Positions 6,666 through 63,575 of a DNA stretch of 64,000 nucleotides are shown here, one piece after another. Every line of letters starts with the position of its first letter. The stretch's first letter is position 1. The stretch is from Ylistrum balloti (lineage: Eukaryota): NCBI RefSeq assembly GCF_031769215.1, contig NW_026782025.1:1-64000 (forward strand). Reading direction: 5' to 3'. A program made the position numbers and the translations under genes. A model generated the notes under the pieces. It was not told the origin of the DNA, ran no database searches, and saw only the letters and a list, made by a program, of their open reading frames with translations.

Positions 6666-6830
6666 GTTTAAAAGTCCTAGAAGGATGAAACAGATGTATG
6701 CAGTAATTTATTGATTGGCTCTATTGTATCTGGTTCTGAATTTATCTTCAAAGTTACTAATCACGTGTGTATCTCTTGAAAAGACCCTTCAAGCTGTTAA
6801 AGATATTTCATGTAGAAATGCATATTTAGA
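6666..6830 (+). mobile_element. Copy of dispersed hammerhead-bearing repeat family (core degenerate)
   Basis: AAAAGTCCTAGAAGGATGAAACAGATGTATGCAGTAATTTATTGATTGGCTCTA matches the family consensus. Stem II (GTCCT-AGA-AGGAT), GAAAC and GTA are kept, but CTGATGA is lost. Confidence 0.7.
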
Positions 6831-7392
6831 TACGAAACCTGATCTAATCTGTCAAAGATAGAAAAAATGTTTTTTCTTCCAATTAGAAAAGTTTTGATAA
6901 ATATCCATATTTGACAATGGTTTTCCAATGAGAACTACATATTAATCTCTCTTAGTGACCTGCTTGTCTGTGTTATCCATTCATTCATTATTGGCCAAAA
7001 TATTTCCTACAAAATTGAAGTAACATTATACATGACAGCTTTACTCCGTCTGTACCATTATTTACATGAAGTCCTGATTCTATGTGACAAGCCCAAGGCC
7101 GTATCTTTCCCCGAAGATCACGACTGTCAACATTTGTGAAATGTGAGCGAGATGTAGGCTGTGATAATACAGGTAGCTGTCCCCTAACAATCTAAAGATG
7201 ACACGGCCGTACCATTGTGTACTTTTAACAACGTAATCCGTTTACCAACTGTTGAGCCTTGCATGATCCACTTAAAATCAAATTCTACCTGAATTTCCAT
7301 TGGGACATAAATCATTGTCACATGCACATGTACAGGATATGTTTATCTCTTAGCGAAGGACAAATCGCCGATAAATAAACGGCGACTACCAT

Positions 7393-8995
7393 GATAATGT
7401 TTGGAGAAATGTGGTGATGTCGAGACAAAAACGATAATGTTTGGAGAAATGGTAATGTAGAGACAAAGTGATATTGTTTGGAGAAATGGTAATGTAGAGA
7501 CAAAAGCGATAATGTTTGGAGAAATGGTAATGTAGAGTCAAAAGCGATAATGTTTGGAGAAATGGTAATGTAGAGACAAAAGCGACAATGTTTGGAGAAA
7601 TGGTAATGTAGAGACAAAAACGATAATGTTTGGAGAAATGTGGTAATGTACAGACAAAGCGATAATATTTGGAGAAATGTGGTGATGTCGAGACAAAAGC
7701 GATAATGTTTGGAGAAATGTGGTGATGTCGAGACAAAAGCGATAATGTTTGGAGAAATGTGGAGATGTCGGGACAAAAGCGATAATGTTTGGAGAAATAT
7801 GGTGATGTAGGGACAGAAGTGATAATGTTTGGAGAAATGTGGTGATGTTGGAACAAAAGTGATAATATTTGGAGAAATGTGGTGATGTCGGGACAAAAAC
7901 GATAATGTTTGGAGAAATGTGGTGATGTCGAGACAAAAGCGATAATGTTTGGAGAAATGTGGAGATGTCGAGACAAAAGCGATAATGTTTGGAGAAATGT
8001 GGAGATATCGAGACAAAAGCGATAATGTTTGGAGAAATGATAATGTAGAGACAAAAGCGATAATGTTTGGAGAAATGTGGTGATGTCGAGACAAAAGCGA
8101 TAATGTTTGGAGAAATGTGGAGATGTCGGGACAAAAGCGATAATGTGGTGATGTGGAGAAGTGATAATGTTTGGTGAAATGTGGTAGGGACAAAAGTGAT
8201 AATATTTGGAGAAATGTGGTGATGTCGGGACAAAAACGATAATGTTTGGAGAAATGTGTCGATGTCGGGACAAAAGCGATAATGTTTGGAGAAATGTGTC
8301 AATGTTGTGACAAAGTTAAATGTTTCGATGTCGGGACAAAACTGATAATATTTTGAGAAATGTGTTGATGTCGGGACAAAAGTTAAATGTTTCGATATCG
8401 GGACAAAAGTAATAATGTTTGGAGAAATGTGTCGATGTCGGAATGAGAGTGATAATGTTTGGAGAAATGTGTTGATGTTGGGACAAAAGTGATATTGTTT
8501 GGAGAAATATGTCGTTGTCAGGACGAGAGTGATACTATTTGGAGAAATGTTTCGATGTCGGGATGAGAGTGTAATGTTGGTGAAATGTGTCGATGTCGGG
8601 ATGAGAGTGTAATGTTGGTGAAATGTGTCGATGTCGGGATGAGAGTGTAATGTTGGAGAAATGTGTCGATGTCGGGATGAGAGTGTAATGTTGGTGAAAT
8701 GTGTCGATGTCGGGATGAGAGTGTAATGTTGGAGAAATGTGTCGATGTCGGGACGAGAGTGTAATGTTGGTGAAATGTGTCGATGTCGGGATGAGAGTGT
8801 AATGTTGGAGAAATGTGTCGATGTCGGGATGAGAGTGTAATGTTGGTGAAATGTGTCGATGTCGAGATGAGAGTGTAATGTTGGTGAAATGTGTCGATGT
8901 CGGGACGAGAGTGTAATAATGTTGGTGAAAGGTGTCGATGTCGGGATGAGAGTGTAATGTTGGTGAAATGTGTCGATGTCGGGACGAGAATAATG
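7393..8995. repeat. Compound minisatellite, 38-40 bp units, ~40 copies, G-rich/C-poor on +
   Basis: Three unit types follow each other: GATAATGTTTGGAGAAATGGTAATGTAGAGACAAAAGC (38 bp), GATAATGTTTGGAGAAATGTGGTGATGTCGAGACAAAAGC (40 bp) and GTAATGTTGG(A/T)GAAATGTGTCGATGTCGGGATGAGAGT (38 bp). Confidence 0.98.
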
Positions 8996-10729
8996 TGAAT
9001 TATGATACAATAAGACAATGAAATATTTGAAGAACGCTTTTGTTCAAATTAAATTTGCATCATCGGTTTTGAAAACATCCAATCTTTGAAACCATGACTG
9101 GATTTCTGTTGTGTTCTGGGGGCCATTCTACCGTTCACGTGTTCGGAGTGTCGTTTATCGAACGATAGATGTGTCTTTTTAAAATATGGATAGGGTCTTG
9201 ATGAAGACTTTTGAAGATGTATAAAAATTAGAGTTAATATTCATACAAAAACTCGAGAAGACATCAAATACAGCTATAATTCATAATGGAAAGTCTCTCA
9301 AACCTAAGATACGTTTATGTTTAATTGTTTTACATATTTATCTTCAATTGAGTATTATGCTCCTTAGTCGCACTGATTACATGCATGTGACATATATCTA
9401 AATCATGTTATAAACCTGCATATTCTTGTAGCCGTGAAGAGGAATTTGAAAAAAAAAGAAAAATAGCAGGAAGTCATTGATGAAAGATAATTATCACAAT
9501 AGGTTCCCGCTCATTAACATACTTGATACTGGTTAATGTGTTAGGATTCTTTTCGAACTTCCTGTAGGCCTCGCTCAGGAGTTTTAGCAAGATGACGTGT
9601 GACTTAATTATCTCAAGTAGAATGTTGCGCTTGGCAATCAAATTAGTGCCTAACGGGGAGGTATGGGAGTAAAGGGGACTTATTACACTACTTCATTTTA
9701 CTCGCAAACTGGGAATTTTTTGTGGATTATGAACTTGTGTTTATTTTTCAAGAGGTCTTTTAATTAATTGTTTGGAAGCTACACATCTTGATTATTTCCT
9801 CTATAAAACGTGTAATGATTCTACAATAAAGGTCGCTCGGCGATTTTTTTTTGTCTTTCTTCTGTTTTTTGTTTTTGCGTTTTGTTTTGGTTTTGTTTTA
9901 AATCATTCGCTTGTAGTGTAGTAGTGTGTATACATGGTAATCGCACGACCAGTCTCTTTCAAGATATTATTGTTTGTATCGTCAATTACCTGAAGCGTGA
10001 TTTTATTTCACCTGTCTTTCCTGTCTAGGTGATCGATGGCTCTTGTAGGACTACTTGGAAGACACAACCTTCTAAAACATATGCTGTGTGAATACTTGCT
10101 TATCTTAACGTCATCACAGCGGCTAGGGCGATATGAGGACAGGTATCAAGAGTGACACCACAAGTGAAAAAAAAGGCCGGAAAGAACGGAAGTTACTGAG
10201 ATTCCCATGGTTGCAGTGGAGACAACATATCAATATGAATTGACCTCTTCAAATTTTCGTTGGTAGAATGCAGAGAAAACTAACCGTATACTGCATTATT
10301 TGTTAATTGCCTCTTACGAACATGTAGTGGAAGTCAGCGGATCATATCCTTTGGATCCGTTATGTCCGTTAAACAAGAGGCATCGGAGAACTACTCCGAA
10401 TCTGAGAGGATGTCAAACAATTAAACACCTTCCATATGTATACAGATAAATCAGGTATATCATTTCTTACGTCACTATCTGTTTCCTTATTCACACACTA
10501 GTCCCCTCATAACCACTCTCTATTTGAATTCTACAATGTATTCACCAGATGACGTCAAAATGAGATGATCCCAATTATTAAAAAAACATTAATGTCTTGT
10601 ATTGTTGAATTTCGTAGAATACATTTAAAAGCGAGAAGGATTTTTTTTACATCAAAAACTGCTATATAGAGTGTTATTGTGTTTAGCATATAATATTTCA
10701 ACAAAATCACTCACTGACTAATCTGGAAA

Positions 10730-62145: not shown

Positions 62146-63199
62146 AAAAGGGGCCCAAAGGCCTTCACGGTCATCTAACTGTAAAGACCTGTATATGAAA
62201 CAGGCCAGATAATTCTCAAATATATTGCTCAACTACTCTACAGCTTACAAAGAAGCGATGTTGGTTCATAAAAATATTTTCTGCAAACTTCATTACTTAT
62301 ACATACTACTAAACGAATGCCGCTACTCCGAACCTATTGCTCACTGGAAAAGAAATTTTAAGGTCTCAACTCCCTTAACCCAAAAGATATTGAATAGAGG
62401 TTAAGGTCAATTGTTTGAACAAATCGGTATCCCTTCATCCACTTATATTGAAGAATCAATATCAACAGCCTTGACCCTTTTTGTTATTGATAAGTCATTT
62501 AATGATTTTTACACATTGTCCCCAGTGACTTTGCAAAATGGGTCGAGGTCATGCATTTGATTAAACATACTATGCGCCCAATACCAGTACGCCGGGCCTT
62601 TTGTTTATTGAGAAGAAGTCGTTTAAAGATTTTGACACATATGACACTTGTGATCTTGGAAGTACGCGAAGATCAGTGATATGAAAAAAACCTTGGTAGC
62701 CAGATTGCAATTGGCCCAATTTCAGCACCCTTGGCCTTTTTAGTTATTAGAACAAACTTTGTCGCATCATGCTACAAGATCAATAATTTCACCCGGGCCT
62801 TTCAGTTATTGAGAAGTCGTTTAGATATCATAACATTGTTTTTACCTCTGTTACCTTGCAAGTAAGTTAAGGTAATTCATTTTAACAAACTAAGCAGCCC
62901 TTTATCCCGTCATACCACCGAACTAATATTAACACCGTTGCTTAGTTTTTGAGAAGTCGTTTAAATAGTTCAACACATTTGACTTCTGTAACCTTGGAAG
63001 TCGGTCAAGTTAATTCATTTTGACAAAATTTGGTAGTCCTTCATCCCGTCATGTTACAGGCGCAATATCAGAGCCCTTGGCCTTTTGGTTATTGAGAAGA
63101 ATCATTTGAACAGAAAGTTTACGCACGGCGGACGACTGACGGCGGACGAAACAGGATGGCTATAGGTCACCTGACTCTTTGGGTCTGATGACCATGAAA
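62146..63199 (-). mobile_element. Old non-autonomous Helentron/HINE with ~140 bp degenerate satellite-like internal repeats
   Basis: The right end has an imperfect hairpin, AGGTCACCTGA (63164-74) / TCTGATGACC (63184-93), next to a GACG/GGAC microsatellite (63121-48). The left end has a GGCC-CAAA-GGCC hairpin followed by the subTIR CGGTCATCTAA. The internal TTATTGAGAAG block recurs at 62484, 62605, 62744, 62806, 62946 and 63089. Confidence 0.72.
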
Positions 63200-63467
63200 T
63201 TACTGTCGTCCACTTCGAAGCTACGCATGAGACAAGACAAGTTGATAAACTAATTAATTATATTTTAATTAAGTTGGCTTGTAATTTTAAGGTGTCGCAT
63301 AATTATATTTTGTCTTAGTAATACTGTTTGATTATCGTGATGTTTAAAATGTCGGACTATATTTTTATCACATTATACAATTGATTAGGCTTGATCAAGT
63401 TGTAGTCACTGTAGACTTGGATGTGTTCAAAATTTATATCACAGACAGTTTTTATTGAAATACAGGA

Positions 63468-63575
63468 TGGAAGGACAGAACAGCTGCATGGCACAGTTTA
63501 ATTTATTATTTGGCTCTGTTTATCTAATTTTTACATAGTATTAAATGGTGCTATTCACTAGTGTGTCTTTTCTTC
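63468..63575 (+). mobile_element. Copy of hammerhead-bearing family (core decayed)
   Basis: GGAAGGACAGAACAGCTGCATGGCACAGTTTAATTTATTATTTGGCTCTG...GGTGCTATTCACTAGTGTGTCTTTT matches the family consensus. Confidence 0.65.

What the first reader, a model, noticed from the sequence alone, without database searches (positions are those of the whole stretch)
6666..63575. A dispersed ~150-200 bp family with a hammerhead at its 5' end, at least seven copies in 64 kb
Seen: homologous segments at 6666(+), 18430-18600(-), 23687(-), 23795(+), 25724(+), 35935(+), 36210(+) and 63468(+). Combining them gives the consensus GCATCA-CTGATGA-GTCCT-AGA-AGGAC-GAAAC-AGCT-GTA-TGATGC, followed by AATTTATTGATTGGCTCTACCGTGTC...GGTGCTATTCACTTGTGTGTCTTTTGTACGATCTTTGAAGAT. 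That consensus is a textbook minimal hammerhead: 6 bp stem I, 5 bp stem II and a palindromic ACAGCUGU stem III suited to dimer cleavage. Inference: this is a non-autonomous ribozyme retroelement (retrozyme-like or PLE-derived SINE). It is dispersed here as monomers rather than tandem arrays, and this density suggests very high genomic copy number. I cannot tell whether the family has been described.
Basis: partly seen in the sequence, partly recalled or inferred. Interest (0 to 1): 0.78.

Follow-up and report, generated by a model that had tools for sequence, protein, structure and literature searches.

The report
Decayed hammerhead retrozyme copies, bivalve genome
The window holds seven old, broken copies of a roughly 400-base non-coding jumping element with a self-cutting hammerhead RNA motif; it is a relative of the "retrozymes" already described in mussels, so the kind is known, though its insertion ends and a second conserved RNA hairpin hint at how such elements are copied.

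Summary
The repeat family is real: a profile built from genome copies finds seven insertions in the window (E 2e-67 to 3e-7). The unit is about 399 bp, not 150-200 bp. The hammerhead sits at unit positions 270-313, not at the 5' end. Copies look short because they share one 3' end and are 5'-truncated.

One (23687-) is not a separate copy, and one copy (28114) was missed. All window copies are old (K2P 0.16-0.28) and none has a working-looking ribozyme.

Genome-wide, the consensus is a type I hammerhead that just passes Rfam's cut-off, with an 8-nt palindrome in helix III. The 45-nt ribozyme unit is often expanded into arrays of 4-29 units; other agents of this scan reported those arrays elsewhere in this genome.

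The unit has no coding capacity and no tRNA-like head. It shows 5' truncation and partial upstream tandem "tails", and it aligns with Mytilus-type retrozymes. I file it as a new member of the non-LTR retrozyme / Penelope-type non-autonomous kind. No autonomous partner was found.

A 41-nt stem-loop is conserved with covariation between scallop and mussel-type families. Insertion ends sit about 15 nt from it in both.

The parts
6503..6783 (+). 5'-truncated copy (unit positions 86-394). The hammerhead is reduced to stem II, GAAA and helix III at 6673-6698; stem I and CUGANGA are deleted.
   Evidence: nhmmer E 1.2e-36; CM R1 28.8 bits, model 13-38 only; K2P 0.26
18468..18641 (-). 5'-truncated copy (unit 227-395). 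The hammerhead at 18553-18599 is the only one in the window with the CUGAUGA...GAAA...GUA core intact, but it has a 3-nt insertion in stem II.
   Evidence: nhmmer E 1.3e-16; regex core; CM R1 43 bits; no Rfam hit at E<=10; the MFE fold is not a hammerhead, z -0.96; K2P 0.28
23624..23909 (+). 5'-truncated copy (unit 58-404) with internal deletions. Hammerhead relic at 23803-23840 (core broken).
   Evidence: nhmmer E 2.2e-47; CM R1 29.2 bits; K2P 0.21
25749..25820 (+). Short 5'-truncated copy holding only the 3' body (unit 328-404), with no hammerhead.
   Evidence: nhmmer E 2.9e-9
28114..28231 (+). 5'-truncated copy (unit 270-404) starting at the hammerhead's stem I, with a deletion inside the ribozyme.
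   Evidence: nhmmer E 3.1e-7; sequence read
35934..35967 (+). 'Tail': a 34-nt copy of the unit's 3' end (unit 371-404) directly upstream of the full-length copy, forming a partial tandem.
   Evidence: nhmmer E 0.003; junction read
35969..36356 (+). Near full-length copy (unit 7-403). Decayed stem-loop near its 5' end and hammerhead relic at 36222-36266 (CGGACGA, GGAA: core broken).
   Evidence: nhmmer E 2e-67; CM R1 21.7 bits, E 0.011; CM R2 finds no stem-loop at E<=1; K2P 0.23
63469..63573 (+). 5'-truncated copy (unit 288-390) starting inside stem II of the hammerhead.
   Evidence: nhmmer E 1.4e-17

Best explanation
The window holds seven old, inactive insertions of a non-autonomous retroelement with a unit of about 399 bp and 39% G+C. 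It belongs to the animal 'non-LTR retrozyme' kind and is related to the Mytilus retrozymes.

Shown:
- The unit carries a 41-nt stem-loop at positions about 13-55.
- It carries a type I hammerhead at 270-313. Stem I is 6 bp and stem II 5 bp. Helix III is only 2 bp but is embedded in the palindrome ACAGCUGU. The predicted cleavage site is after GUA, near position 307.
- It has a fixed 3' end (...UUUUGUACAAUCUU).
- Copies share that 3' end and have variable 5' ends.
- Full-length copies start at the stem-loop's 5' edge or run on for 8-55 nt (rarely up to 271 nt) into a second pass of the unit's 3' end.
- The ribozyme unit is secondarily expanded into 45-nt arrays at the DNA level.

Inferred mechanism:
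- Transcripts that span two ribozymes pair through the helix III palindromes and self-cleave. The two ribozymes can come from partial tandems, from arrays, or from two RNAs in trans.
- The unit-length RNA is probably ligated into a circle by a host RNA ligase, as shown for the mussel and axolotl retrozymes.
- A reverse transcriptase supplied in trans, most likely from a Penelope-like element (RT plus GIY-YIG nuclease), copies it by target-primed reverse transcription. This starts at a fixed point about 15 nt 5' of the stem-loop.
- Early stops give the 5'-truncated copies seen in the window. A full round gives unit-length copies, and a small overshoot gives the tails.
For: Family and layout:
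- MAFFT consensus of 30 loci gives the unit; profile hits.
- The same 3' end is seen in 53 copies, followed by unrelated flanks.
- 5' starts are spread from 7 to 328 in the window and similarly in incidental copies.
- Tails of 8-271 nt occur in about 16 of 34 full-length copies. Of the 16 tail-less copies, 12 start at unit positions 7-19.
- L036 and L013 are head-to-tail partial tandems, and L011 has an inverted truncated copy 42 nt upstream.

Ribozyme:
- Consensus units score 34.1 bits against Rfam RF00163, whose gathering score is 34.
- Other genome units score up to 41.6 bits.
- The genome holds 1512 exact 42-nt units, control 0.
- Two adjacent units fold with an 8-bp helix between palindromes, z -2.1.

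No other identity: no tRNA gene and no other Rfam family in full-length copies.

Relationship to mussel retrozymes:
- The scallop monomer L036:1587-1985:- aligns to the 353-nt tandem unit L095:300-652:- with z 5.9, and to L146:3026-3357:- with z 6.0.
- L161 and L095 match the published Mg353 construct (PMC7229834, Suppl. Table 2; read) by direct reading.
- Stems I and II and the palindrome differ by compensatory changes.

Potential helper: Penelope-like elements with RT plus C-terminal GIY-YIG and long open frames are present. Their own hammerheads have the same architecture.
Against: - No autonomous partner was identified. Neither the family profile (nhmmer --max) nor the stem-loop model matches any of the 30 sampled GIY-YIG loci.
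- No target-site duplications were detectable (0 of 29 at p<=0.05).
- Covariation inside this genome is weak: 88.6% of cells paired against 87.3% in shuffles.
- The unit-length RNA is not unusually stable (z -1.17).
- Insertion ends do not coincide with the ribozyme cut site, so the cleaved linear RNA cannot be the direct template.
- No expression, cleavage or circle data exist for this genome.
- Complete multimers of the 399-bp unit, the textbook retrozyme arrangement, were not seen. I saw only 1.05-1.7-unit partial tandems.
- The best dispersed copies are still about 8% from consensus, so the family may be extinct.
Confidence: 0.72

Rival explanations
1. The copies are solo pseudo-LTRs or 3' fragments of an autonomous Penelope-like element, not a separate non-autonomous family.
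For: Penelope elements are heavily 5'-truncated, form partial tandems, carry 30-40-bp tails and hold type I hammerheads in their pseudo-LTRs (PMC8557442, PMC4209133). All of these are seen here. Xenopus retrozymes match Penelope pseudo-LTRs (bioRxiv 10.64898/2026.07.22.740005). I sampled only 30 of at least 117 GIY-YIG candidates, and N-terminal-GIY-YIG clades may be missed.
Against: In the alignment of 30 long copies, conservation falls to background upstream of the unit start or tail. About 30 full-length units are flanked by unrelated sequence on both sides. No similarity to any sampled Penelope locus, including the flanks of their own hammerheads.
Confidence: 0.12
2. It is a conventional SINE mobilised by a LINE, and the hammerhead is a passenger.
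For: It is short, non-coding and dispersed, with a shared 3' end, 5' truncation and of the order of 10^4 copies. The 5' ends of tail-less full-length copies cluster at one place, as expected for a linear transcript with a fixed start.
Against: There is no tRNA/5S/7SL-like head and no A-rich or microsatellite tail. Partial upstream tandems are frequent. The whole unit is collinear with mussel retrozymes that are shown to form circular RNAs (PMC7229834).
Confidence: 0.1
3. It is a satellite or segmentally duplicated repeat spread by DNA-level processes only.
For: The 45-nt ribozyme unit behaves as a satellite. Arrays of 4-29 units show higher-order periods of 180 and 270 nt and runs of identical units. 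Exact units are spaced at multiples of 45 nt.
Against: The 399-bp unit is dispersed on many contigs in unrelated flanks, with one precise 3' end and graded 5' truncation. That is the signature of reverse transcription from the 3' end, not of DNA duplication.
Confidence: 0.04

Closest known systems
Mytilus galloprovincialis non-LTR retrozyme (Rtz Mg353; Cervera & de la Pena 2020, PMC7229834)
   Same: Both are non-coding, AT-rich units of 350-400 nt with one type I hammerhead whose helix III is a short stem inside a palindrome. The layout is collinear: cut site, spacer, conserved stem-loop, body, hammerhead. Global alignment to Mytilus-type units gives z about 6. A 29-nt core of the stem-loop is nearly identical. 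Both co-exist with Penelope-like elements.
   Different: The mussel element is described as tandem repeats expressed as abundant circular RNA. Here copies are mostly dispersed and 5'-truncated, with only partial tandems, and no RNA data exist. The stems and palindrome differ by compensatory changes (ACAGCUGU against ACGCGCGU). The cut site lies 92 nt from the insertion 3' end, against 33 nt in the related 332-nt family. The scallop ribozyme unit has expanded into 45-nt arrays.
Hammerheads in pseudo-LTRs of Penelope-like elements (Cervera & de la Pena 2014, PMC4209133; Craig et al. 2021, PMC8557442)
   Same: Type I minimal hammerheads thought to act as dimers. The insertion style is the same: 5' truncation, partial tandems, short tails and an adjacent inverted truncated copy. 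This genome's own Penelope elements carry hammerheads with palindromic helix III (ACAUGU, ACCGGU, ACUAGU, AGCGCU).
   Different: No RT/GIY-YIG ORF is attached, and there is no sequence similarity to the sampled Penelope loci. Stem I is 6 bp and stem II 5 bp, closer to canonical type I than to the 'min-HHR' with a long stem II.
Vertebrate non-LTR retrozymes and their dispersed monomers (Li, Clavereau & Pollet 2026, bioRxiv 10.64898/2026.07.22.740005)
   Same: Families with consensus lengths of 51-972 bp; monomer derivatives are scattered evenly while multimers are clustered. The authors propose that they are non-autonomous derivatives of Penelope elements.
   Different: That work covers vertebrates, three insects and a coral, not molluscs. 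In the parts I read, it does not describe insertion-end geometry or a second conserved RNA element.
Schistosoma Sm-alpha and newt satellite 2 hammerhead repeats (from my own knowledge, not checked here beyond mentions in PMC7229834)
   Same: Short non-coding repeats carrying type I hammerheads with a weak helix III that cleave as dimers.
   Different: I tested no sequence relationship. These come from different phyla and have different unit sizes.

Membership tests
Hammerhead ribozyme type I (Rfam RF00163) | Conserved core CUGANGA ... GAAA ... UH cleavage triplet | tested here: met
   The genome-wide consensus has CUGACGA, GAAA and GUA. 15 of 63 mostly independent dispersed units keep the core. 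In the window only 18553-18599(-) does.
Hammerhead ribozyme type I (Rfam RF00163) | Score at or above Rfam's gathering cut-off (34 bits) | tested here: met
   Genome units score 34.1-41.6 bits. Not met by any window copy.
Hammerhead ribozyme type I (Rfam RF00163) | Three helices supported by compensatory changes | tested here: inconclusive
   Within the genome, 88.6% of cells pair against 87.3% in shuffles, with 10 double changes, as expected for neutrally decaying copies. Against mussel-type units there are compensatory differences in stem I (A-U to G-C), stem II (C-G to U-A) and the palindrome, but these are few independent events.
Hammerhead ribozyme type I (Rfam RF00163) | Self-cleavage | not testable with these tools
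   This needs in vitro transcription of monomeric and dimeric constructs.
Animal non-LTR retrozyme (Cervera & de la Pena 2020) | Short (about 170-400 bp), non-coding, low-GC unit with one type I hammerhead | tested here: met
   399-bp unit with 39% G+C, no tRNA gene and no Rfam family other than the hammerhead. I ran no ORF scan on the unit, so 'non-coding' rests on its short length and on reading the consensus.
Animal non-LTR retrozyme (Cervera & de la Pena 2020) | Tandem repeats, so that two hammerheads flank a unit | tested here: inconclusive
   Partial tandems of 1.05-1.7 units are common. L036 has two hammerheads 399 nt apart. No multimer of complete units was seen, but sampling was limited to 80 loci.
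Animal non-LTR retrozyme (Cervera & de la Pena 2020) | Expression as unit-length linear and circular RNA | not testable with these tools
   No transcriptome access.
Animal non-LTR retrozyme (Cervera & de la Pena 2020) | Sequence relationship to a described retrozyme | tested here: met
   z 5.9 and 6.0 against Mytilus-type units from metagenome contigs. The shared stem-loop shows covariation. Identity of L161/L095 with the published Mg353 was judged by eye only.
Penelope-like element pseudo-LTR / Penelope-mobilised element | 5' truncation, partial tandem (pseudo-LTR-like), short tail, inverted adjacent copy | tested here: met
   The inverted adjacent copy was seen once (L011).
Penelope-like element pseudo-LTR / Penelope-mobilised element | Shared sequence with an RT/GIY-YIG-encoding element of the same genome | tested here: not met
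   No match in 30 GIY-YIG loci with the family profile or the stem-loop model. The sample is incomplete.
SINE (LINE-dependent) | Pol III-type head (tRNA, 5S or 7SL derived) | tested here: not met
   ARAGORN finds 0 genes, and Rfam at E<=1 finds only the hammerhead in full-length copies.
SINE (LINE-dependent) | A-rich, microsatellite or LINE-derived 3' tail and target-site duplications | tested here: not met
   3' ends stop at ...GUACAAUCUU and are followed directly by unrelated sequence. No TSD was found in 29 copies. A LINE-derived tail could not be tested.

The most novel reading that the evidence does not exclude
Bivalve retrozymes carry a second functional RNA element besides the hammerhead: a 41-nt stem-loop with 17 pairs, conserved between scallop and mussel-type families. 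Its outer helix covaries (GUAGAC/GUUUGC against GAUACC/GGUAUC).

On this reading the hairpin, not the ribozyme cut site, sets where reverse transcription starts and ends.
- In two diverged families, insertions end 13-17 nt 5' of the hairpin, although the cut site lies 92 nt from that end in one family and 33 nt in the other.
- Full-length copies begin at the hairpin's 5' edge or overlap it by a short tail.

That geometry is what one round of copying on a circular (or multimeric) RNA would leave if the reverse transcriptase docks on the hairpin. If true, it would give the first cis-element and the first sequence-level evidence for the proposed circle-templated mobilisation of animal retrozymes.
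Probability: 0.3. Interest if true: 0.75.

Novelty: new member of a known kind. Interest (0 to 1): 0.45.

Why it matters
The family itself is ordinary: one more hammerhead retrozyme, here in a scallop-like genome, and the window copies are dead relics.

It may matter for an open question about animal retrozymes, namely who copies them and from what template. This genome offers thousands of dispersed insertions with readable ends. Those ends, together with a hairpin that covaries between scallop and mussel-type families, point to a defined start site next to the hairpin. That is directly testable by RT binding, retrotransposition assays with hairpin mutants, and circular-RNA junction sequencing.

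For annotation, the result means the many "minimal hammerheads" and 150-200-bp repeats in this genome should be masked as one 399-bp family and not called separately.

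Tried and rejected
Rfam on the window: 0 hits at gathering.
- A minus-strand hammerhead at 23687: no hit from the hammerhead model at E<=1. The corresponding consensus segment only loosely resembles a hammerhead, so I treat it as chance.
- Target-site duplications: none above shuffled expectation in 29 full-length copies. 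The copies are old and their 5' boundaries are approximate, so this is weak negative evidence.
- Autonomous partner: 30 GIY-YIG loci carry their own, different hammerheads and have no similarity to the family or its stem-loop.
I did not try another route.
  - Copy number therefore rests on 7 copies in 64 kb, 5 in 97 kb of unrelated loci and 1180 exact 3'-end 17-mers. In my sample 6-19% of copies keep that 17-mer (counted by eye). The result is of the order of 10^4 copies.
- Within-genome covariation of the hammerhead is not informative.
- Global structure of the unit RNA is not more stable than shuffles.
- Alignment with the published Mg353 sequence itself was left out because that sequence has no reference in the tools. 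I used metagenome contigs carrying the same repeat instead.
- Of the 112 contigs hit by the metagenome pattern scan, 97 are GC-rich chance hits. They served as a control: 6 of 97 form the inner hairpin, against 7 of 11 bivalve-like loci in the same register.
- Full-text search for the stem-loop core found only unrelated primers. Two bivalve SINE papers mention neither it nor hammerheads.
- Organism: earlier notes of this scan call it a (saucer) scallop. I did not verify this.

Full report
**What is in the window.** Rfam finds no hammerhead in the 64 kb at gathering score. A scan for CUGANGA...GAAA gives one family-type site, at 18593-18567 on the minus strand.

The family is real all the same. 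Searching the window's own genome (G000, 648.5 Mb, 1372 contigs) with Rfam Hammerhead_1 gave 27 matches over the cut-off. Their flanks showed a shared repeat. A DNA search with one well-kept copy returned dozens of matches at 75-81% identity. A MAFFT alignment of 30 of them gives a unit of about 399 bp whose conservation drops to background on both sides.

A profile HMM of that unit hits the window seven times, with E from 2e-67 to 3e-7. It also hits a 34-nt piece that repeats the unit's 3' end just upstream of the one near-full-length copy.

All seven insertions reach the same 3' end, within 15 nt of it (model ends 390-404). Their 5' starts are at unit positions 7, 58, 86, 227, 270, 288 and 328. 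The hammerhead is at unit positions 270-313.

- 23687(-) lies inside the 23624-23909(+) copy and is not picked up by a hammerhead covariance model at E<=1.
- 28114-28231 was missed.
- The assembly gap at 26227-26408 touches no copy.
- Window copies are 16-28% (K2P) from the consensus, and none has a plausible active ribozyme.

**The ribozyme.** The genome-wide consensus unit reads GCAUCA / CUGACGA / GUCCU-AGA-AGGAC / GAAA / C-AGCU-G / UA / UGAUGC.

- It scores 34.1 bits against RF00163, whose gathering score is 34. Other units reach 41.6 bits.
- Helix III is only two pairs, but it sits in the 8-nt palindrome ACAGCUGU. Two neighbouring units are predicted to pair through it. This is the dimer design known from newt, Schistosoma and Penelope hammerheads (PMC4209133).
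- Of 63 mostly independent dispersed units, 15 keep the core.
- Covariation inside the genome is weak: 88.6% paired against 87.3% in shuffles. That is expected when the variation is post-insertion decay.
- Against mussel-type relatives the stems and the palindrome differ by compensatory changes.

**Arrays.** In many copies the 45-nt ribozyme unit is repeated head to tail, 4-29 times in the loci I hold. The normal upstream and downstream parts of the element flank the array.

- Arrays have their own diagnostic variants, runs of identical units and higher-order periods of 180 and 270 nt. This points to DNA-level expansion in place.
- The genome holds 1512 exact 42-nt units, mostly spaced at multiples of 45 nt.
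- By contrast it holds 1180 exact 17-mers of the element's 3' end and only 8 exact 29-mers of the stem-loop core.
- So the arrays are much younger than the dispersed element.

Other agents of this scan reported such arrays on other pieces of this genome (s1-249757, s1-234339, s1-244081). One of them reached the same conclusion about in-place expansion. I treated those notes as leads and checked the point on my own loci.

**What kind of element.** The unit has 39% G+C, no tRNA-like part and no Rfam match other than the hammerhead.

- Fifty-three copies end at ...UUUUGUACAAUCUU and are followed directly by unrelated sequence, with no A-rich tail.
- About 16 of 34 full-length copies are preceded by a partial second copy of the unit's 3' end, 8-271 nt long.
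- 12 of the 16 tail-less copies begin at unit positions 7-19.
- L036 and L013 are head-to-tail partial tandems. L011 has an inverted truncated copy just upstream.

These are the insertion hallmarks described for Penelope-like elements (PMC8557442). No target-site duplication could be shown.

[quoted passage not shown] They carry their own hammerheads of the same design. None of the 30 loci sampled shares sequence with the family. The family is therefore not simply the pseudo-LTR of one of those elements, but its helper remains unidentified.

**Relation to known retrozymes.** The published mussel retrozyme construct (PMC7229834, Suppl. Table 2) shares a 13-nt block followed by CCGAGG with the scallop unit. 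A pattern built on that block found 112 metagenome contigs. Most are GC-rich chance hits.

Eleven AT-rich contigs carry bivalve-type repeats:

- L095 is a 353-nt tandem repeat. L095 and L161 match the published mussel sequence by direct reading.
- L116, L138, L146, L165 and L178 hold a related 332-nt family, here called 'B'.
- The scallop monomer aligns to these units with z about 6, in the same order of parts.

I therefore file the scallop family as a new member of the animal non-LTR retrozyme kind. The defining RNA behaviour (unit-length and circular RNA) is untested, and complete multimers were not seen.

**A second conserved element, and the insertion ends.** The shared block is the core of a 41-nt stem-loop.

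- RNAalifold on 8 scallop and 11 other sequences predicts 15 pairs, 7 of them with compensatory changes.
- For that structure 91.5% of cells pair against 80.7% in shuffles. The covariation score is 0.359 against 0.179. Both are exceeded by 0 of 500 shuffles, and slid controls reach at most 0.137.
- The covarying outer helix lies outside the bases fixed by the search pattern.
- The hairpin folds alike in both groups (-18.7 and -18.8 kcal/mol, z about -3).

Two caveats apply. The sequences fall into a few related groups, so the number of independent events is small. Part of the inner stem was fixed by the search.

In the scallop family the insertion 3' end lies about 13-17 nt 5' of the hairpin of the next unit. 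In family B, 8 of about 11 copies end at unit positions 32-35, again 13-15 nt 5' of the hairpin. Yet the ribozyme cut site is 92 nt from that end in the scallop and 33 nt in family B. Full-length copies begin at the hairpin's edge or overlap it by a short tail.

One reading is that the hairpin positions the reverse transcriptase on a circular or multimeric RNA, which is then copied once around. The alternative is a linear transcript that starts at the hairpin, with tails made by template jumping. My data cannot separate the two.

**Verdict.** The interpretation as a ribozyme-bearing non-autonomous retroelement is supported, but its size, layout and copy list need correction. The kind is known, and the window copies are relics. 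The hairpin and the end geometry are the part worth following up.

Noticed in passing
L034:1844-1886:- (scallop), L146:3270-3312:-, L095:559-601:- (metagenome contigs); decayed relic in the window near 35981-36023: A 41-nt stem-loop (17 pairs) is conserved between the scallop family and mussel-type retrozymes, with a covarying outer helix. Insertions in both families end 13-17 nt 5' of it. I found no description of it in the papers searched.
   Followed up: partly
G000 C348:515548-516041, C874:485752-485975 and many others (L001-L020): The 45-nt hammerhead unit forms head-to-tail arrays of 4-29 units inside copies of the element, with higher-order periods. The genome holds 1512 exact 42-nt units. 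Other agents of this scan have already reported these arrays on other pieces.
   Followed up: partly
window 7393-8989: A G-skewed minisatellite of 38-40-nt units, about 40 copies, lies next to the 6503-6783 copy. It explains the 166-490-aa ORFs that are open in several frames on the minus strand.
   Followed up: partly
G000 C422:240415-261997 (L062-L065, L079) and C129:50248/67535 (L056, L057): Penelope-like elements (RT plus C-terminal GIY-YIG) with 755-aa open frames. On C422 they stand in a head-to-tail array with a 5.36-kb period.
   Followed up: no
L058, L060, L061, L064, L066, L069, L073 (downstream of GIY-YIG domains): At least four other minimal type I hammerhead variants belong to this genome's Penelope elements. 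Each has a different palindrome in helix III (ACAUGU, ACCGGU, ACUAGU, AGCGCU).
   Followed up: no
G000 C54:293069-293223(-) and C85:481399-481502(+): The 17-nt 3'-end motif of the element recurs at 46-nt (C54) and 29/58-nt (C85) spacing. The element's tail region may therefore also form short tandem arrays. No sequence could be fetched.
   Followed up: no
L097:2708-2789:- and L119:97-178:+ (metagenome contigs): A further variant of the stem-loop (GGAA...UUCC inner stem, different outer helix) with no hammerhead core found within the 330 nt upstream. The hairpin may also occur outside hammerhead-bearing repeats.
   Followed up: no
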